In this document: positions 6,690-37,017 of the stretch, piece by piece
How positions within the stretch are numbered: position 1 is the stretch's first letter
Layout: the number at the start of each line of letters is the position of its first letter
Virus record (IMG/VR): IMGVR_UViG_3300043418_000072
Span: 186,001 to 250,000 of that record
Reading direction: 5' to 3' (one strand)
Length of the DNA: 64,000 nt
Made by a program: the position numbers and the translations under genes
The notes under the pieces: generated by a model
Database searches by the model: none
The model's input: only the letters and a program-made list of their open reading frames with translations
What the model was told of the DNA's origin: nothing

Positions 6690-6959
6690 TTACTTTTTAA
6701 AGCTGAACTTCTCGCTGAAGTCTTTTGTGGCTTTGGCGAAGTCAAACTTGCTGGCTTCGGTAGCTGCTTTAACTGCTTCGCTAGTCAATTGAGCCACTGT
6801 GTCGGAACCGGCCTTAGCTGCCTTCTTTGTGTACTCAGCTTGTGCGTCAACAAAACCGTTTAGTGCCTTGGCGACTGCTTGGTTGTTTGCGAATACTGTG
6901 TTAACGAATTGTTTTTTACCGTTAGATACGGTGTCGATGAATGTGTCTGTAATAAACAT
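6690..6959 (-). CDS. phasin-like (PHA granule-associated) protein
   Basis: Start reassigned to MFITDTFIDTV (AGGAG RBS); Ala/Lys-rich amphipathic helices, FVDAQAEYTKKAAK; PhaR-like palindrome upstream. Confidence 0.55.
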   Translation of the reverse strand: MFITDTFIDTVSNGKKQFVNTVFANNQAVAKALNGFVDAQAEYTKKAAKAGSDTVAQLTSEAVKAATEASKFDFAKATKDFSEKFSFKK

Positions 6960-7032
6960 GTTGTTTCTCCTAAATAGACGAATACTTCTTTTACGGCCCG
7001 CCCTATGCAGCACCGTACAAAGTATTTAGTTA

Positions 7033-7061
7033 TTATAATGCTGCGCCGCAGCAAAAGTCAA
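7033..7061 (-). promoter_or_regulatory. sigma70 promoter with a PhaR-type operator TGCTGCG-C-CGCAGCA (7039-7053) in the spacer
   Basis: TTGACT-18-TATAAT on minus; perfect 7-bp inverted repeat between the boxes. Confidence 0.6.
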
Positions 7062-21526: not shown

Positions 21527-22678
21527 TTATAGATTGTCAATTGACTTGCCAACCAAATAGAATTTACTGTAGCAACCGATTAGTCCCTTAGTGAAGTCAC
21601 CGCCGTTGCACCAACTGGTTGGAACTTGTTTTGACAAGTCGCTCAGACCATTAAGCCATTTTGAGTACGCAGGGATAGCATCGCTTCTAAACCAATACTC
21701 ATTTTCTTGGAACATGGGATTGTATGGTTTCTTTACTTTAAACAAGATATCACTGTTGTGGGGATAAATTAGATCGTTGACAATGGAGTAGTATTGTTCT
21801 GGTACCAATGCGCCATACTTACTGTGATCAAGTTTATCCCTTAGGTCAGGGTGTAAATCAAACCATGCACAAATGACCTGTGCTTGCTTTGCTAGCATTT
21901 CGGGTAAGTCGGGAGTCCAATAAAACAACTCGTCGTTTTCCCAATAATGGTCGTTGGTTTGATTAAAGTCCCCCACGCTGATACTTAACTGTATGTCTAA
22001 GAAATACAAGTAGTAGGCATTGTCTTTGTAACAGATTCGTGGCTTGTCAATGCCGTGAATAAACCCGACTCTACGACCTGCATCGTATTGCTGTAGGTAA
22101 TTCTTTGTGGCATTGTGCAGCAAGATGTTCTTGGGCATAGACGAGTTATAACGCACACCTGGGTTGAAATCATCAATCCAATTTGGGTTATTGTAATAGT
22201 CTAAGAGATCATCAGTGTAGTCGTATAGAGTTACTTTTGTTCTAGTATCTATGTCTAGTTTCTTAAGCATTGGTAACGCTTGAAAATCAATTTCACTGCG
22301 CAAATTCCATGCTTCGTCGCTGGCACTCTTAGTGGACTCAGTGCCCTTAAACGGACCGAAGATCAATATCTCATCAATGAAGATGTTGTTGTCGTGAAAT
22401 GCACGTAGGATAGTGTAGCTATCAATGCCGCCGCTGAAGCAAAGCACAAGGTAATCATACTTGTCCCTAAGTTGCTGCGCCCTAATGCGATACAACTCAC
22501 TTAGTGAAATATCAACAGGTTTGGTCCAGTTGTAGTTTGAAAACGCCGACTCGTTGAAATTCCAGTGAGGATGGATGCCGGACTTTGAGTGTTCAGTGAT
22601 AGCATCAATTTTTCTGTAGAACTTCTCGGGTCCTACCTGATAAAATCCACGTTTATCGTATTCAATCGAATTTGACAC
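21527..22678 (-). CDS. PP-loop (adenine nucleotide alpha-hydrolase) protein
   Basis: LCFSGGIDS PP-loop; GIDKP. Confidence 0.7.
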   Translation of the reverse strand: MSNSIEYDKRGFYQVGPEKFYRKIDAITEHSKSGIHPHWNFNESAFSNYNWTKPVDISLSELYRIRAQQLRDKYDYLVLCFSGGIDSYTILRAFHDNNIFIDEILIFGPFKGTESTKSASDEAWNLRSEIDFQALPMLKKLDIDTRTKVTLYDYTDDLLDYYNNPNWIDDFNPGVRYNSSMPKNILLHNATKNYLQQYDAGRRVGFIHGIDKPRICYKDNAYYLYFLDIQLSISVGDFNQTNDHYWENDELFYWTPDLPEMLAKQAQVICAWFDLHPDLRDKLDHSKYGALVPEQYYSIVNDLIYPHNSDILFKVKKPYNPMFQENEYWFRSDAIPAYSKWLNGLSDLSKQVPTSWCNGGDFTKGLIGCYSKFYLVGKSIDNL

Positions 22679-23549
22679 GTTGCTTTATTTTCCGAAAGTT
22701 TGATGCTAATTCTTCTAGCTGATTGGGAACTGTTTTTACTGGGCGATGGTCTAGTTCTAGCAAGCGTTCTGCAACTACCGGTTGAGATACAATTTTTCGA
22801 ATCTTTTCTATCATTACAGGATCAGCAGTCTTGTTAGCAATTAGGATGGACCAGCGGGTATACCCATAATCATTAATGCCAAGTTCGCGCAATGTTGGTA
22901 CGTTAGGATTGGCTGGCAACCGATGTGCAGACATTACTGCCAGTGCCCTGATTTTTCCAGATTTGATATAAGGATCCATAATTGACTCAGCTTCCATCAT
23001 GTAATCGATCTGGCCGCCCAGCACATCTACTAGAGCTTGTGCTTGTCCTTTATAGGGTACGCTAGTAAACGTACCTTGCCCGTTGCCAACAATGGCTCCT
23101 GCAATGTGCGTCCCCGACCCAATGCCACTTGTGCCGTAAGTAACAGGCCTAGAGCGTGAAATTTCAATCAGTTGCTTGAGAGTCTTTGCAGGATGGTTAT
23201 TGCTCACTACCAACATAGAAGCTGAATTTCCTAGATGCTTAATGACCACAAAGTCACTAAACTCGTATTCAACATTAGCTTCTCCGATGTTATCAGTGAG
23301 TCCATTACTGGCAATCATAATAACTGTCTCATTGGTTCGCACTTTAGATAGGTAGTTGTACGCAATAAATCCACCGCCACCTAGTTTGTATTCCAAGTTG
23401 GTGGCAACACCGTTTTCTTCTAGTGCAGTTTGCACAGTCCTAGCTACACGATCACTAACGCCGCCGGGCTGATACTGAACAATTATTTTAACTGGTTGAG
23501 CAAACGCAGAGCTTGCAACTAATACCAATGCGGCTAGAATTAATTTCAT
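22662..23549 (-). CDS. Bug/TctC tripartite tricarboxylate transporter substrate-binding protein
   Basis: Signal peptide; IIVQYQPGGVSD, YGTSGIGSGTH, VPYKGQAQALVDVLGGQID, PNVPTLRELG. Confidence 0.92.
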   Translation of the reverse strand: MKLILAALVLVASSAFAQPVKIIVQYQPGGVSDRVARTVQTALEENGVATNLEYKLGGGGFIAYNYLSKVRTNETVIMIASNGLTDNIGEANVEYEFSDFVVIKHLGNSASMLVVSNNHPAKTLKQLIEISRSRPVTYGTSGIGSGTHIAGAIVGNGQGTFTSVPYKGQAQALVDVLGGQIDYMMEAESIMDPYIKSGKIRALAVMSAHRLPANPNVPTLRELGINDYGYTRWSILIANKTADPVMIEKIRKIVSQPVVAERLLELDHRPVKTVPNQLEELASNFRKIKQRVKFD

Positions 23550-24017
23550 TTATTTTGTCTTTTTGGTTTCAGCTGCTGCAACTCGTTTACGCAGGCTGCT
23601 ACTAGAGAAACTGTGATCTCTACTGTTAAAGATATGCTTGACACCAATGTGCGAACCTTCTGCTCGACCTGTAAAGTCTTGGCTCTCGTATTCCACACCT
23701 AAGATGCGCACATCAATGGGCAAGATGAGAATCAAGTCACGCAGGTCTTGTTCAGTTTGGTACACAACAATTTCGTCAACAAAGCGACATGCACTTAGTT
23801 GGATTTGTCGTTCTACTACACTTTGAATAGGCTTGTTTTTGGTATCAGGGCGATCGATTGTGGCATCTGTTTGCAATCCTGCAATCAAGTAATCACAATG
23901 GTTCTTGGCTTCTGCCAACATGGCAATGTGTCCTGCATGTAGCAAGTCAAATTGACTGAAGGTAATGCCAATGACTTTACCTTCATCTTTGAGCTGTTTG
24001 ATCTTATTGAAAATCAT
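23550..24017 (-). CDS. cytidylyltransferase (TagD/RfaE-like)
   Basis: FDLLHAGH (HxGH), C-terminal SSSSLRKR; start reassigned to MIFNKIK. Confidence 0.9.
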   Translation of the reverse strand: MIFNKIKQLKDEGKVIGITFSQFDLLHAGHIAMLAEAKNHCDYLIAGLQTDATIDRPDTKNKPIQSVVERQIQLSACRFVDEIVVYQTEQDLRDLILILPIDVRILGVEYESQDFTGRAEGSHIGVKHIFNSRDHSFSSSSLRKRVAAAETKKTK

Positions 24018-24220
24018 GCTATTAAATGTTTCTTTCTCTCTTTGAAGTCTGCGCAATGGGCACACTTCTTAACCTGCACAATATAGTTGCCTTTATATGT
24101 GCGAACCTCTTTGGTATTGTCCCACTTGGTCCATTTATGAAACCCAAAGCTGCACCAGCAACTAGTTACCAATGGATCGTCGCCCTTTAGTACTCGGAAT
24201 GTGTTTTCTTCTTCATTCAT
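24014..24220 (-). CDS. small Cys/His Zn-binding hypothetical protein
   Basis: CSFGFHKWTKW...CAHC. Confidence 0.65.
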   Translation of the reverse strand: MNEEENTFRVLKGDDPLVTSCWCSFGFHKWTKWDNTKEVRTYKGNYIVQVKKCAHCADFKERKKHLIA

Positions 24221-24473
24221 CGTCGTCGGTGGTTTCTGATAATTCATCCATACCTTCACCGGTAGTGTGTTGGTATGTTTTGTCGCCTACTATCCATTCG
24301 TCAGTCCAGAAGCGTTGGCTGTTACTGGACTCGGGTGGCGGAAGTAGCGCAAGCATAGTGAATACTTGCTCACGCTCTTCGCCTTCTAGAATTCGAGTAG
24401 TTTTGAGCAAGCCGCAACGTTTTAGAAACGCACGAGCTTCCTCTTTGGTCTTGAACTCTTTGGGTTTGATCAT
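24213..24473 (-). CDS. hypothetical protein
   Basis: Translationally coupled ORF. Confidence 0.65.
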   Translation of the reverse strand: MIKPKEFKTKEEARAFLKRCGLLKTTRILEGEEREQVFTMLALLPPPESSNSQRFWTDEWIVGDKTYQHTTGEGMDELSETTDDDE

Positions 24474-24781
24474 TGATCAGCTTCAAGTTTGACCTGAAGT
24501 GGGAATCCGTTGTTACGTGCAAGCAGTGTGACTTCAACACCTTTTTGCTCTGCAATTTCGTAAGGGAGAGTTGCAACCACTGCCGAACCTTCTTCGTGGA
24601 TTCGCATAGTCAATTGCTCAGAACTGTCATTGTCGTGATTGAAAACAGCCTTCAGCGTCTCGACAACAAATTCCATAGTAGTGGTATTGTCGTTAACGTA
24701 AATCACCTTGTACAAACTTGGTGGCTTAACATCGAAACGTGGTTGGATTTTAATTTGTTGACGAGTTTTGGTATTTGCCAT
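24470..24781 (-). CDS. clpS: N-end-rule adaptor ClpS
   Basis: PPSLYKVIYVNDNTTTMEFVVETL...IHEEGSAVV...EIAEQK...FPLQV. Confidence 0.95.
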   Translation of the reverse strand: MANTKTRQQIKIQPRFDVKPPSLYKVIYVNDNTTTMEFVVETLKAVFNHDNDSSEQLTMRIHEEGSAVVATLPYEIAEQKGVEVTLLARNNGFPLQVKLEADQ

Positions 24782-24797
24782 AATTGAATTAAGTTAA

Positions 24798-24821
24798 ACG
24801 TAGGGCGTCATTGCCCTACGT
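24798..24821 (-). terminator. hairpin downstream of hsp20
   Basis: ACGTAGGGC/GCCCTACGT 9-bp stem. Confidence 0.65.
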
Positions 24822-24834
24822 ATATCACATTATA

Positions 24835-25281
24835 TTACTTTTTGAAAGTAATTGCAATGGATTTTGGTTTCTTTTCTTCCGGAACAACTAGTTCCAGTTG
24901 AACAGAAAGGATACCGTTTTCCACAGTAGCGCCACGAACCTCTACGTTGTCTGCCAACGTAAAATCGCGAACGAAGTTGCGGTTACTGATTCCTTGGTGC
25001 AAGTATGTTGGAGCAGCCGAATCGGCATCCTTGACCTTTTCACCAGTTACAGTAAGAACATTGTCTGCTAGCTCTACGTTGATTTCGCTTTCTGAGAATC
25101 CAGCAACTGCAACTTCGACCACAAAATGGGTTTCGTTAACTTGAACGATATTGTGTGGAGGGTAGTTGCCGCTTTTGCTGTTTGCAAAGGTGCGATTCAA
25201 TTCCTCAAACATGCGGTCAAAGCCAATGGCTGAACGATGTAGGGAAGGTAGGTCTAGAGTACGGATGTTGAATTGTGTCAT
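24835..25281 (-). CDS. ibpA: small heat shock protein Hsp20 (IbpA-like)
   Basis: IGFDRMF, YPPHNI, AVAGF, YLHQGIS.R.F.R.F.LA, NGIL. Confidence 0.95.
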   Translation of the reverse strand: MTQFNIRTLDLPSLHRSAIGFDRMFEELNRTFANSKSGNYPPHNIVQVNETHFVVEVAVAGFSESEINVELADNVLTVTGEKVKDADSAAPTYLHQGISNRNFVRDFTLADNVEVRGATVENGILSVQLELVVPEEKKPKSIAITFKK

Positions 25282-25342
25282 GTTATTCTCCTATTAAGCA
25301 AGTTATGACGTTTAAAATGTAGCCCGATTATCGGCACTACAT
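25277..25342 (-). promoter_or_regulatory. ROSE-like RNA thermometer in the hsp20 5' UTR
   Basis: CUUGCU pairs with AGGAG (bulged G); GUCAU pairs with AUGAC over the start codon; upstream hairpin AUGUAG..CCGAU-A-AUCGG..CUACAU. Confidence 0.65.
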
Positions 25343-25351
25343 GTTTATTTA

Positions 25352-25648
25352 TTATACAGACAAAAAGTCAGTGATCAAATTATTTTGGGCATCTACAACT
25401 TCAATACGTTTCCTGCTGCTGCTATGGTATTGTGGTTTGTAGGTTAGTAAGAAAAAGCTGATACTTGCTGGATCCTCGAGAGTGAGATACAAGTATCTGC
25501 CGTCGTTTTTAAGCGTGTACGGCTGCTGATAACGACTGCCCCATCGCTGCATATCCGTTTGAATAAAGGATATTGCAGTTTGGTTAACGCCAACAGGATT
25601 TCCTGGAAAAATGGTTTCGTCAGCAGGTAATCGAAACCTAACTTGCAT
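25352..25648 (-). CDS. hypothetical protein
   Basis: TGATG-coupled to the rpsU stop; start MQVRFRLP. Confidence 0.6.
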   Translation of the reverse strand: MQVRFRLPADETIFPGNPVGVNQTAISFIQTDMQRWGSRYQQPYTLKNDGRYLYLTLEDPASISFFLLTYKPQYHSSSRKRIEVVDAQNNLITDFLSV

Positions 25649-25881
25649 CAGTACAGTTTCTTTGGCAAGCTCTCTGCTTGCAGTTTCTTTTGCCAACGGC
25701 GCTTGGCTTGTGCTGCTGCCTTCTTGCGCTTGGTAGTTGGCTTTTCGTAAAACTCACGTTCGCGAAGTTCTTGCAACTTGCCACTCTCCATGATTTTCTT
25801 TTTAAATTTGCGCAAGGCTTTTTCAACGTTGTCGTTTTGCACAACTACGCTGCTGCCATAAAGTTTCATTCTTTCGTTCAT
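25648..25881 (-). CDS. rpsU: ribosomal protein bS21
   Basis: VEKALRKFKKK...LQELREREFYEKPTTKRKK. Confidence 0.93.
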   Translation of the reverse strand: MNERMKLYGSSVVVQNDNVEKALRKFKKKIMESGKLQELREREFYEKPTTKRKKAAAQAKRRWQKKLQAESLPKKLY

Positions 25882-25888
25882 TTTTATC

Positions 25889-27091
25889 CTATTCTATAAA
25901 ATTAGGTGGGTCGTTATATTTAACCACTTTGTCAGTAATCTCTATCTTTTTAAAACCCTGCTTTTTAATTTCAGTTAGGGTGTACATATATGGTGTAAGA
26001 GTACGCTCTAAAATACTCTTTAGTCCACGGGCACCAACTTTTTGCTGCACTGCTAAGTCGGCTACTGCTTCAATGGCTTCCGGTGTAAACAGTAATTCCA
26101 CTTCGTCTGACGAGAAGTAAAACTTCATCTGTGCAAGCAAGTTGTTCTTAGGTTCAGTTAGAATCTTAACAAAGTCATCCTTGCTTAGTTCGTCAATTTG
26201 CACAGAGATTGGGAAACGTCCAGTAAACTCCGGTATCATCCCAAACTTTTGGAAATCGTCCGGGGTCACTTCTGTAACATCAATTTGGTCTTCATTGGCT
26301 GAGTTGAATCCAATACTGGTTCCTCGCTGCCTACGGTCGACAATCTTAGGTAGTCCAGCAAAGGCACCGCCGGCAATAAACAAGATCTTGCTGGTATCAA
26401 TTTCCACTTGATCCATTGCTGGATGCTTCTTGCCACCATTTACACTAACCTTGCACTTGGTACCTTCTACTAGCTTGAGTAGAGCTTGTTGTACTCCTTC
26501 GCCGCTTACGTCACGAGTTAGGCTAGCTGATTCACTTTTACGTGCAATTTTGTCTACTTCATCAAGGAAGATAATACCTTGCTCACAACGGGCAACATCG
26601 TATTCTGCTGCTGCTAGCAAGCCCGAGATGATGCTTTCAACATCATCCCCTACATATCCTGCTTCGGTTAGTGTAGTTGCATCTGCTACAACAAAGGGCA
26701 CGTTTAGATAACGTGCGATTGTTTTGGCTAGTAGTGTTTTACCTGAGCCAGTTGGGCCGTGAATTAGAATGTTTGACTTTTCTAGTTCAACTGAACTTTC
26801 GAAGAAGATGCGTTTGTAGTGATTAACCACTCCCACACTAATTGCAATTTTGGCAGCGTCTTGGCCGATAATGTATTCGTCTAAGTGCTGTTTGATTTTG
26901 ATTGGATCAAGTGCCTTGCCAATTTTCTTATCCTTGCGAATATGATCGTTAGCTTCTTTGTTAATGATGTTGCTACAAAGCGTGATACATTCATTACAAA
27001 TGCCCGCGTCGTTGGCTACAATTAACTTCTCAACTTCATTACGGCTTTTACCACAGAAGTTACAGTGGATCGGTTGAATGGTTTCGCTCAT
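25889..27091 (-). CDS. clpX: ClpX AAA+ unfoldase
   Basis: CNFCGK..ICNEC zinc-binding domain, [39 protein letters not shown] loop, GARGL. Confidence 0.97.
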
Positions 27092-30512: not shown

Positions 30513-30544
30513 CTTCTACTCCTGTTTTGCTTTGCTATGTAGTT

Positions 30545-30573
30545 ATTATAGCAAGAAATCCATTTCGGGTCAA
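30545..30573 (-). promoter_or_regulatory. sigma70 early promoter (copy 3)
   Basis: GGTTGACCCGAAATGGATTTCTTGCTATAAT, 17-bp spacer. Confidence 0.8.
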
Positions 30574-33102: not shown

Positions 33103-33108
33103 GTATGT

Positions 33109-33137
33109 ATTATAACCGAGAATCCATTATCAGTCAA
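33109..33137 (-). promoter_or_regulatory. sigma70 early promoter (copy 5)
   Basis: TTGACT-17-TATAAT; ATG lies 6 nt after the -10. Confidence 0.75.
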
Positions 33138-36982: not shown

Positions 36983-36988
36983 GTATGT

Positions 36989-37017
36989 ATTATAGCAAGA
37001 AAACCATTTCGGGTCAA
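36989..37017 (-). promoter_or_regulatory. sigma70 early promoter (copy 7)
   Basis: GGTTGACCCGAAATGGTTTTCTTGCTATAAT. Confidence 0.8.

What the first reader, a model, noticed from the sequence alone, without database searches (positions are those of the whole stretch)
25277..25342. ROSE-like RNA thermometer controlling a phage hsp20
Seen on the mRNA: GUCAU-AA-CUUGCU-UAAU-AGGAG-AAUAAC-AUGAC. CUUGCU pairs with the SD leaving a bulged G, GUCAU pairs across the start codon, and a second hairpin lies upstream. Both TATAAT and TAAATA boxes precede it. Established: U(U/C)GCU opposite the SD is the ROSE hallmark upstream of ibpA-type sHSP genes. Inference: the phage retains temperature-gated translation of its chaperone.
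Basis: partly seen in the sequence, partly recalled or inferred. Interest (0 to 1): 0.6.

Follow-up and report, generated by a model that had tools for sequence, protein, structure and literature searches.

The report
ROSE-like leader on phage hsp20
A 354-kb phage carries, in front of its small heat-shock chaperone gene, a two-hairpin RNA leader that resembles the bacterial ROSE "RNA thermometers"; the same leader sits in front of hsp20 (and dnaK) genes of many other phages, including cultured marine ones, so whether it senses temperature can now be tested directly.

Summary
On the minus strand, 25342..25277 holds hairpin I and then GUCAU-AA-CUUGCU-UAAU-AGGAG-AAUAAC-AUGAC, ending on the start codon of a 148-aa IbpA-like Hsp20 gene in a 354-kb phage. 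In one sequence the motif is not beyond chance. Comparison makes it real: 75 of 80 viral hsp20 loci keep YUYGCU opposite the SD. Hairpin I is kept with compensatory changes at 7 of 11 pairs (10 of 11 over 80 distinct leaders). A model built from these leaders picks the hsp20 leader as the best hit in five cultured phage genomes. Rfam's only match is ROSE_3, always below its cut-off (22-34 bits against 43). So this is a diverged ROSE-like variant, not a curated member. It differs in four ways: a phage sigma70-type promoter instead of sigma32, an AU-rich hairpin II, a 5-bp clamp over the AUG, and reuse in front of phage dnaK in relatives. Hairpin II rests on motif invariance and on homology. It shows no covariation, RNAalifold does not predict it, and nearest-neighbour folding shows no melting switch. 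Temperature gating is therefore inferred (about 0.55). Autoregulation by the IbpA-like protein is the main rival or partner. The TAAATA box reading is not supported.

The parts
25373..25378 (-). -35-like hexamer TTGATC of the hsp20 promoter
   Evidence: Promoter scan, 10 of 12 matches with a 16-nt spacer. It belongs to the phage's TTGAC(C)-N17-TATAATAnnTA promoter class.
25351..25356 (-). -10 hexamer TATAAT. The stop codon of the upstream ORF lies inside it.
   Evidence: The extended motif TATAATAAATA has an exact match only here in the window.
25344..25344 (-). Predicted transcription start (inferred, not mapped), 7 nt after the -10 hexamer and 2 nt before hairpin I
   Evidence: Inferred from spacing in the promoter class.
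25317..25342 (-). Hairpin I: seven outer pairs, one extra G on the 5' arm, inner CCGA/UCGG, loop UAA. Stable and strand-specific (U.G wobble).
   Evidence: MFE fold. RNAalifold consensus with 7 of 11 pairs compensatory. 99.6% of cells paired against about 40% in slid controls. 10 of 11 pairs compensatory over 80 distinct leaders.
25310..25316 (-). Single-stranded spacer UUUAAAC. Its length and sequence vary in relatives.
25305..25309 (-). GUCAU, 5' half of the clamp that can pair with AUGAC across the start codon
   Evidence: Invariant in the 19 group-A leaders of alignment A4 and absent from the other 6. Present in L001-L030. AUG predicted more than 90% paired up to 45 C.
25297..25302 (-). 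Anti-SD CUUGCU, containing the ROSE hallmark U(U/C)GCU with the G that would bulge
   Evidence: Invariant in A4. YTYGCT lies opposite the SD in 75 of 80 viral hsp20 loci. The U/C alternation keeps pairing with G. Aligned to the ROSE_3 anti-SD by cmscan.
25288..25292 (-). Shine-Dalgarno AGGAG
25277..25281 (-). AUGAC: start codon plus two bases, 3' half of the clamp
   Evidence: Conservation here is confounded by the coding of Met-Thr.
24835..25281 (-). hsp20/ibpA-like gene, 148 aa
   Evidence: PF00011 E 1e-19. PHROG 432 Hsp20 E 3e-39. 48% identity to E. coli IbpA. Equivalents of IbpA Y34 and R93 (Y40, R101) are invariant in the phage family.

Best explanation
The roughly 63-nt 5' leader of the phage's ibpA-type hsp20 mRNA is a diverged, short (two-hairpin) ROSE-like translational control element. 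Transcription starts from a constitutive phage promoter read by host sigma70, not from a heat-shock promoter. Regulation is therefore left to the RNA. Hairpin I sits at the very 5' end. It is stable and does not melt, and it scaffolds or protects the leader. Hairpin II is weak. It holds the SD against CUUGCU (bulged-G ROSE arrangement or the neighbouring CUU register) and holds the AUG in a 5-bp GUCAU/AUGAC clamp, so 30S binding is hindered in the cold or resting state. Warming melts this AU-rich structure and lets the sHSP be translated. Shown here: the sequence, the promoter class, hairpin I (by covariation), invariance of the anti-SD motif, similarity to ROSE_3, and wide conservation in phages. 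Inferred: the pairing of hairpin II in vivo, the transcription start, and the temperature response.
For: The only Rfam match is ROSE_3. It is full length (model positions 1-69) and ends on the hsp20 start: window 22.4 bits, relatives 25-34 bits. Positive controls behave as expected: P. aeruginosa ibpA scores 69 bits on ROSE_3 and E. coli ibpA 100 bits on ROSE_2. 75 of 80 viral hsp20 loci have YTYGCT-N2-10-RGGAG-N3-12-ATG. In all 57 unique leaders RNAfold finds a stem-loop upstream of the anti-SD, and most carry the same G-CC...GG core on very different outer stems. Hairpin I has 7 of 11 pairs with double-sided changes and 99.6% of cells paired, against about 40% when partners are slid. Over 80 distinct leaders 10 of 11 pairs are compensatory. 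Model R1 finds one strong site in the 354-kb genome (75.9 bits; the next is 17.7). In each of five cultured phage genomes its best genome-wide hit is the hsp20 leader. The promoter is sigma70-type and belongs to a class whose other members have short unstructured leaders. By published experiment, short ROSE-like leaders with this architecture are thermometers in Pseudomonas: hairpin II alone suffices and hairpin I stays closed (PMC3669281).
Against: No copy reaches the ROSE_3 gathering score. Hairpin II never varies in its core, so it has no covariation support, and RNAalifold predicts only hairpin I. Nearest-neighbour folding gives hairpin II only -3.5 kcal/mol at 37 C, or -0.9 in the ROSE register. 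The SD is about 40% unpaired and flat from 5 to 50 C, while the validated controls go from 0.04-0.08 to 0.16-0.41. The opening energy of the start region is unexceptional among 24 crudely called starts in the window, rank 11. The hexamer-gap-SD pattern in one sequence is within chance. No transcript or temperature data could be obtained.
Confidence: 0.55

Rival explanations
1. Aggregation-sensing autoregulation rather than, or together with, thermosensing. The phage IbpA-like protein binds the structured leader of its own mRNA (and of phage dnaK mRNA in relatives) and blocks translation. Misfolded or assembling virion proteins draw the sHSP away and release translation, as shown for E. coli IbpA.
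For: E. coli, Cedecea and Vibrio IbpA repress their own translation through the RNAT-type 5'UTR. This needs R93 and an aromatic residue at position 34 (PMC10474464). Both equivalents (Y40, R101) are invariant in the 14 aligned phage proteins. The hairpin I core is nearly invariant from phages to the ROSE_3 consensus and many bacterial ibpA leaders, which is more than a plain stabiliser needs. The same leader type precedes phage dnaK, as expected for a shared trans-acting factor. The promoter is not a heat-shock promoter.
Against: No binding could be tested here. According to that paper R93 is general to alpha- and gamma-proteobacterial IbpAs, so its presence may only reflect ancestry. The RNA determinant recognised by IbpA is not defined.
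Confidence: 0.25
2. No switch: hairpin I is only a 5'-terminal stabiliser of the mRNA, and the rest is a strong translation start. CUUGCU is conserved for another reason, such as a standby or S1 site or a binding site for another factor.
For: Only hairpin I has covariation and energy support. The predicted SD occlusion is modest and insensitive to temperature. 5' stem-loops stabilise mRNAs, and this role was proposed for hairpin I of the Pseudomonas ibpA leader (PMC3669281).
Against: The anti-SD hexamer stays in place opposite the SD while the spacers, loops and flanks around it diverge. Different clades add different helices that close the start region: GUCAU/AUGAC in this clade, pairing to codons 5-7 in another, and UUGCUUA/UGAGCAA in the dnaK leaders. 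Other genes of the same promoter class have short leaders without any of this.
Confidence: 0.1
3. Hairpin I is a DNA operator (a CIRCE-like inverted repeat at the transcription start) for a repressor of chaperone genes, not an RNA structure.
For: It is an inverted repeat just downstream of the -10 box, and it is present before both hsp20 and dnaK in relatives. CIRCE has a similar position.
Against: The half-site sequences are not conserved; only their complementarity is (six outer pairs with two to four pair types each). The conserved U.G wobble (46 of 80 leaders) and the extra G on the 5' arm are strand-specific and would be mismatches on the other strand or in a symmetric operator.
Confidence: 0.03
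4. Hairpin I followed by UUUU is the intrinsic terminator of the upstream S21 operon. The ROSE resemblance is coincidence.
For: In the window hairpin I is followed by four U residues. It lies 10 nt beyond the stop of the upstream ORF.
Against: It is not called by the terminator scan. A promoter lies between the stop codon and the hairpin. The U run is absent in most relatives while the hairpin is kept. The same hairpin is the 5' half of the full-length ROSE_3 match.
Confidence: 0.02

Closest known systems
Short ROSE-like RNA thermometers of Pseudomonas ibpA (Rfam ROSE_3, RF02523; Krajewski et al. 2013, PMC3669281)
   Same: A 5'UTR of about 60 nt in front of an ibpA-type sHSP gene, with two hairpins. 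Hairpin I has the same GAUGCC...GGGUC-type core with one extra G. Hairpin II carries the SD opposite U(U/C)GCU with a G that cannot pair. This is the only Rfam family that matches, and it matches over its full length.
   Different: Scores are 22-34 bits, below the gathering score of 43. The promoter is a phage sigma70-type one rather than sigma32. Hairpin II is AU-rich, lacks the flanking G-C pairs and has two fewer pairs at the top. In this clade the AUG is enclosed by a GUCAU/AUGAC clamp, whereas it is unpaired in Pseudomonas. The carrier is a lytic-type jumbo phage. In related phages the element is also placed before dnaK.
Enterobacterial ibpA/ibpB thermometers (Rfam ROSE_2, RF01832) with IbpA autorepression (PMC10474464)
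   Same: UCGCU opposite the SD, and a first hairpin with the G-CC...GG core. The protein is 48% identical, with the residues needed for mRNA binding conserved.
   Different: The E. coli leader is longer, with three hairpins. ROSE_2 does not match the phage leader. The phage model R1 scores the E. coli ibpA leader at only 15.5 bits.
Known phage or prophage RNA thermometers: lambda cIII (own knowledge) and the fourU element of blyA in prophage SPbeta (PMC10586365)
   Same: A temperature-responsive mRNA structure in a phage genome that controls translation initiation.
   Different: The sequences and architectures are unrelated. Those elements control lysis-lysogeny or lysis genes, not a chaperone. 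None is ROSE-like.

Membership tests
ROSE-like RNA thermometers (ROSE, ROSE_2, ROSE_3) | Lies in the 5'UTR of a small heat-shock (ibpA/hsp20) gene | tested here: met
   HSP20 domain E 1e-19. 48% identity to E. coli IbpA. The element ends on the start codon.
ROSE-like RNA thermometers (ROSE, ROSE_2, ROSE_3) | U(U/C)GCU motif placed opposite the SD in the 3'-proximal hairpin, leaving a G unpaired | tested here: met
   CUUGCU-UAAU-AGGAG at 25302..25288. The motif is kept in 75 of 80 relatives. 100% of cells can pair, and the U/C alternation pairs with the same G. Caveat: this is complementarity. The ROSE register is not the energy optimum.
ROSE-like RNA thermometers (ROSE, ROSE_2, ROSE_3) | One or more stable 5' hairpins upstream of the sensor hairpin | tested here: met
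   Hairpin I has 7 of 11 compensatory pairs, or 10 of 11 in the wider set. Its core matches the ROSE_3 consensus.
ROSE-like RNA thermometers (ROSE, ROSE_2, ROSE_3) | Scores at or above the Rfam gathering threshold of a ROSE model | tested here: not met
   Window 22.4 bits against 43. 0 of 20 relatives reach the threshold. The best phage copy scores 34.1 bits. Controls pass: 69.2 and 100.4 bits.
ROSE-like RNA thermometers (ROSE, ROSE_2, ROSE_3) | Temperature-dependent opening of the SD hairpin and temperature-dependent translation | tested here: inconclusive
   Only in silico. The SD is about 0.40 unpaired and flat from 5 to 50 C, and the AUG is closed. The validated controls show rising accessibility. 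The model cannot treat the non-canonical G pairing. An experiment is needed.
ROSE-like RNA thermometers (ROSE, ROSE_2, ROSE_3) | Coupled to a sigma32 heat-shock promoter (typical of gamma-proteobacterial ibpA) | tested here: not met
   TTGATC-16-TATAAT, a member of the phage's sigma70-type promoter class.
IbpA-autoregulated leaders | The encoded sHSP has the arginine (R93) and aromatic residue (Y34) needed for binding its own 5'UTR | tested here: met
   R101 and Y40 align to R93 and Y34 and are invariant in 14 phage proteins. The criterion comes from PMC10474464.
IbpA-autoregulated leaders | The protein binds the leader and represses its translation | not testable with these tools
   Needs a binding assay and cell-free translation.
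CIRCE-type DNA operator | Inverted repeat with conserved half-site sequence, symmetric on both strands | tested here: not met
   The outer stem sequence varies freely with compensation. The U.G wobble and the extra G are strand-specific.
Intrinsic terminator | G+C-rich stem followed by a conserved U tract | tested here: not met
   Not called in the window. The U run is not conserved in relatives.

The most novel reading that the evidence does not exclude
The leader is the operator of a phage-encoded proteostasis circuit, not just an inherited thermometer. The phage IbpA-like sHSP binds the conserved hairpin I and anti-SD module on its own mRNA and, in related phages, on phage dnaK mRNA. Chaperone output would then follow both temperature and the load of unfolded virion proteins. 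Because the module is kept from jumbo phages to cultured cyanophages, pelagiphages and an OM43 phage, it would be a general way for aquatic phages to tune infection to temperature and protein stress.
Probability: 0.25. Interest if true: 0.8.

Novelty: new variant of a known kind. Interest (0 to 1): 0.6.

Why it matters
ROSE-like thermometers are known as bacterial devices tied to sigma32 heat-shock genes. Here the same design is carried by phages, detached from heat-shock transcription. It is conserved with covariation across a large family of phage hsp20 genes and is reused on phage dnaK. Rfam's thresholds do not detect it. Three full-text searches of the held library returned no paper whose title or abstract reports a ROSE-like element in a phage. 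hsp20 is one of the commonest host-like genes of marine T4-like phages. If its translation is gated by temperature or protein stress, that links phage reproduction to water temperature in a way that can be tested in existing cultures: Melnitz on OM43, Mosig and HTVC115P on SAR11, and S-RSM4 and Bellamy on Synechococcus. It would also give a set of naturally weak, AU-rich ROSE variants for studying how such sensors are tuned to cold habitats.

Tried and rejected
- Rfam at gathering thresholds on 20 relatives found nothing. A ROSE_3 search of the whole phage genome through the genome search gave no match at E up to 10, although cmscan on the 1-kb region gives 22.4 bits.
- The first MAFFT alignments of the leaders (A1, A3) misplaced GUCAU or cut the 5' arm. 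They were replaced by A4, anchored on the hairpin core.
- The melting profile showed no switch. This is reported as evidence against, not explained away.
- The start-region opening energy ranked 11 of 24 crude starts in the window. That control set is poor because it includes internal ATGs, so the result is inconclusive.
- A T4-type late promoter TATAAATA or 'TAAATA box' is rejected for this phage: 14 copies in 354 kb with no evident pattern. Exact TATAAATA does precede the element in Melnitz, Mosig and L006-L009.
- The terminator and DNA-operator readings are rejected (see rivals).
No RNA reads were seen and read laying was not used.
- The phasin annotation of the ORF behind the second leader is too weak to use (E 0.04, below the cut-off).
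- DnaK is absent from this phage, so the dnaK leader could be studied only in relatives.
- A protein tree of phage against bacterial IbpA was not built. 'Inherited together with the gene' remains an inference.

Full report
**What is there.**
- The window is bases 186001-250000 of a 354,098-bp IMG/VR virus record. It carries phage tail-spike-like, DnaB-helicase, ribonucleotide-reductase and endolysin-like genes.
- Nearly all genes run on the minus strand. Around the finding the order is ClpX (25889-27091), ribosomal protein S21 (25648-25881), an unknown ORF (25352-25696), Hsp20 (24835-25281) and ClpS (24470-24781).
- The unknown ORF has an internal ATG that overlaps the S21 stop codon.
- The Hsp20 is of the IbpA type: PF00011 E 1e-19, PHROG 432, and 48% identity to E. 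coli IbpA.

**The observation.**
- A sigma70-like promoter (TTGATC, 16 nt, TATAAT) ends at 25351. The mRNA would then start about 25344, two bases before hairpin I.
- The 84-nt stretch folds at -16.3 kcal/mol with z -2.76, mostly because of hairpin I.
- On its own the anti-SD/SD pattern is within chance: one match, 0.25 expected.

**Similarity to known RNA families.**
- cmscan of the 1-kb region against all 4227 Rfam families gives one relevant match. It is ROSE_3 (the short Pseudomonas ibpA thermometer), model positions 1-69, at 25343-25276, with 22.4 bits and E 0.044. The gathering score is 43.
- Relatives score 25-34 bits at the same place, and none reaches the cut-off.
- The controls work. 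A P. aeruginosa ibpA leader scores 69 bits on ROSE_3, and the E. coli ibpA leader 100 bits on ROSE_2.
- The phage element is therefore ROSE-like, but not a member by Rfam's curated criterion.

**Relatives.**
- A scan of viral contigs found 592 stretches that encode relatives of the protein. The best 80 (100% to 43% identity) were fetched.
- 75 of the 80 have YTYGCT, 2-10 nt, RGGAG, 3-12 nt, ATG in front of hsp20. The other five have shifted variants.
- In all 57 unique leaders RNAfold places a stem-loop upstream of the anti-SD. Most share the same core ([U/C]-G-CC ... GG-G) on very different outer stems.
- I built alignment A4 (25 sequences) anchored on that core. In it hairpin I has 11 pairs, 7 with changes on both sides, and 99.6% of cells paired. 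Slid controls give about 40%.
- RNAalifold predicts the same hairpin on its own.
- The five anti-SD/SD pairs never vary in A4. The GUCAU/AUGAC clamp is invariant in the 19 leaders of the window's clade and absent from the six leaders of another clade.
- A covariance model from A4 (R1) finds the window element at 75.9 bits. The next best site in the whole 354-kb genome scores 17.7 bits.
- Over 80 distinct leaders aligned to the model, 10 of 11 hairpin I pairs show compensatory change. The U/C alternation of U(U/C)GCU pairs with the same G. This alignment is fitted to the model, so the counts lean towards it.

**A second target gene.**
- In many related phages R1 hits a second site about 2 kb upstream of hsp20. 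That site is the leader of a phage dnaK of 632-648 aa.
- The gene order there is S21 or another ORF, then DnaK, Hsp20 and ClpS.
- These dnaK leaders have hairpin I with the same core and CUUGCU opposite AGGAG. The motif can also pair with UGAGCAA at the dnaK start.
- The window's phage has no HSP70 gene.

**Cultured phages.**
- A tblastn search of the phage collection finds hsp20 in 509 records, mostly cyanophages. I read six leaders: Methylophilales phage Melnitz, Pelagibacter phages Mosig and HTVC115P, Synechococcus phages Bellamy and S-RSM4, and phage C48C1.
- Five of them have hairpin I with the G-CC...GG core (G-CU...GG in HTVC115P), then YU(U)YGCU (GUCGCU in S-RSM4) opposite the SD. C48C1 has the CUUGCU anti-SD but a stem-loop of a different form.
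- R1 scores run from 48.3 bits (Melnitz) down to 18.9 bits.
- Searched over five of those whole genomes, R1's best hit is the hsp20 leader in every one.
- Published work notes hsp20 and Clp genes near phage S21 (PMC9723584) and HSP genes in large aquatic phages (PMC12619734). Neither mentions a thermometer.
- Three literature searches returned no paper whose title or abstract reports a ROSE-like element in a phage.

**Bacterial side.**
- The closest bacterial proteins are alphaproteobacterial (54-55%) and enterobacterial (about 48%) IbpAs.
- Their leaders have the classical UYGCU opposite the SD, and often a first hairpin with the same G-CC...GG core. The remaining leader sequence differs.
- R1 finds them only weakly: 28 bits at best, and 15.5 for E. 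coli.
- Two contigs binned as Haliscomenobacter and Pirellulales MAGs carry the phage-type leader (65.8 and 38.1 bits).

**Promoter.**
- The phage genome has 44 TTGAC-N17-19-TATAAT sites on the minus strand against 2 on the plus strand. It also has 18 TATAATAnnTA sites.
- Typical members are followed by a short leader of about 20 nt. Only hsp20 and one other gene (window 7037) have long structured leaders.
- TATAAATA occurs 14 times with no evident pattern.
- hsp20 is thus transcribed from an ordinary phage promoter, not a heat-shock one. That leaves any regulation to the leader.

**Energetics.**
- Hairpin II is weak: -3.5 kcal/mol at 37 C in the register RNAfold prefers, -0.9 in the bulged-G ROSE register, and -0.7 for the clamp alone.
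- The model predicts the SD about 40% unpaired from 5 to 50 C, and the AUG more than 90% paired up to 45 C.
- The validated P. aeruginosa and E. coli leaders have an SD 4-8% unpaired at 25-37 C, rising on heating.
- Phage leaders differ among themselves. Bellamy behaves like the validated ones.
- In another clade the anti-SD region pairs with codons 5-7. Each lineage closes the start region in its own way.
- This points to selection for a closed start region. It is not a formal covariation test.

**Mechanism and rivals.**
- Most likely (0.55) the leader works like a short ROSE-like thermometer, tuned weak for a cool habitat.
- The main rival or partner (0.25) is autoregulation. E. coli-type IbpA binds its own RNAT-type leader through R93 and Y34 and is drawn away by aggregates (PMC10474464). 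Both residues are invariant in the phage proteins. The fixed hairpin I core and the shared dnaK leader fit a common trans factor.
- A pure stabiliser hairpin (0.1), a CIRCE-like DNA operator (0.03) and a terminator (0.02) are disfavoured. The reasons are the invariant anti-SD, the strand-specific U.G wobble and extra G, and the missing U tract in relatives.

**Verdict.**
The element is a real, conserved, ROSE-like leader of a phage hsp20. It is a new variant of a known kind. Its response to temperature remains to be shown.
- No RNA reads could be consulted.

Noticed in passing
L029:961-1029, L031:973-1036, L026:953-1025 and about 20 further loci: In related phages a phage-encoded dnaK (632-648 aa) lies just upstream of hsp20. 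It has its own leader of the same type: hairpin I with the G-CC...GG core and CUUGCU opposite AGGAG. The motif can alternatively pair with UGAGCAA at the dnaK start codon. I know of no ROSE-like leader described in front of a dnaK gene (own knowledge).
   Followed up: partly
window 6951-7037 (minus), ORF 6690-6959: A second long structured leader follows a promoter of the same class (TTGACT...TATAATAACTA). It has a hairpin-I-like stem with the extra G, then UUCGUCU opposite AGGAGAA with a G.A mismatch. R1 scores it 17.7 bits (E 0.12-0.19). It precedes an 89-aa ORF with only a sub-threshold phasin hint (E 0.04).
   Followed up: partly
G000 whole genome; in the window e.g. 7027-7037, 30540-30550, 33104-33114, 36984-36994 (minus): A strongly stereotyped sigma70-type promoter class: TTGACC, about 17 nt that often contain GAAATG, then TATAATAnnTA followed by CAT. 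TTGACC-N16-18-TATAAT occurs 17 times, all on the minus strand. Most sites are followed by a short leader ending in AGGAG.
   Followed up: partly
window 24470-27091 (minus): A proteostasis and translation gene cluster: ClpX, ribosomal protein S21, an unknown ORF whose internal ATG overlaps the S21 stop (TGATG), Hsp20 and ClpS. Relatives have DnaK in place of the unknown ORF.
   Followed up: partly
L170:294-361, L171:287-361, L169:341-415, L172:333-400, L173:315-377, L168:307-379: The hsp20 leaders of five cultured phages (Melnitz, Mosig, HTVC115P, Bellamy, S-RSM4) carry the same two-hairpin module. C48C1 has the anti-SD motif but a different first stem-loop. In Melnitz and Mosig an exact TATAAATA (T4 late-promoter consensus) sits just upstream. 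In Bellamy and S-RSM4 the gene upstream is regA, a translational repressor.
   Followed up: partly
L031, L034, L038 and related loci, leader to codon 7: In the clade without GUCAU, the bases AGUUCUUG that overlap the anti-SD are complementary over 8 bp to UAAGAACU in codons 5-7 (Leu-Arg-Thr). RNAfold closes the whole start region with this helix.
   Followed up: no
L085:1443-1509 and L110:743-812: Contigs binned as a Haliscomenobacter MAG and a Pirellulales MAG carry the phage-type hsp20 leader (65.8 and 38.1 bits). They may be mis-binned phage contigs or prophages.
   Followed up: no
window 22662-24065 (minus): The phage encodes a TctC-family periplasmic binding protein with a signal-peptide-like N-terminus (PF03401, E 8e-35) next to a cytidylyltransferase-like protein. 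This is unusual cargo, and it might hint at a proteobacterial host.
   Followed up: no
L082-L161 (bacterial ibpA loci), upstream 110 nt: Many alpha- and gamma-proteobacterial ibpA leaders share the hairpin I core seen in phages (N-G-CC, loop, GG-G-N') although the rest of the leader differs. This core may be a functional site in its own right.
   Followed up: no
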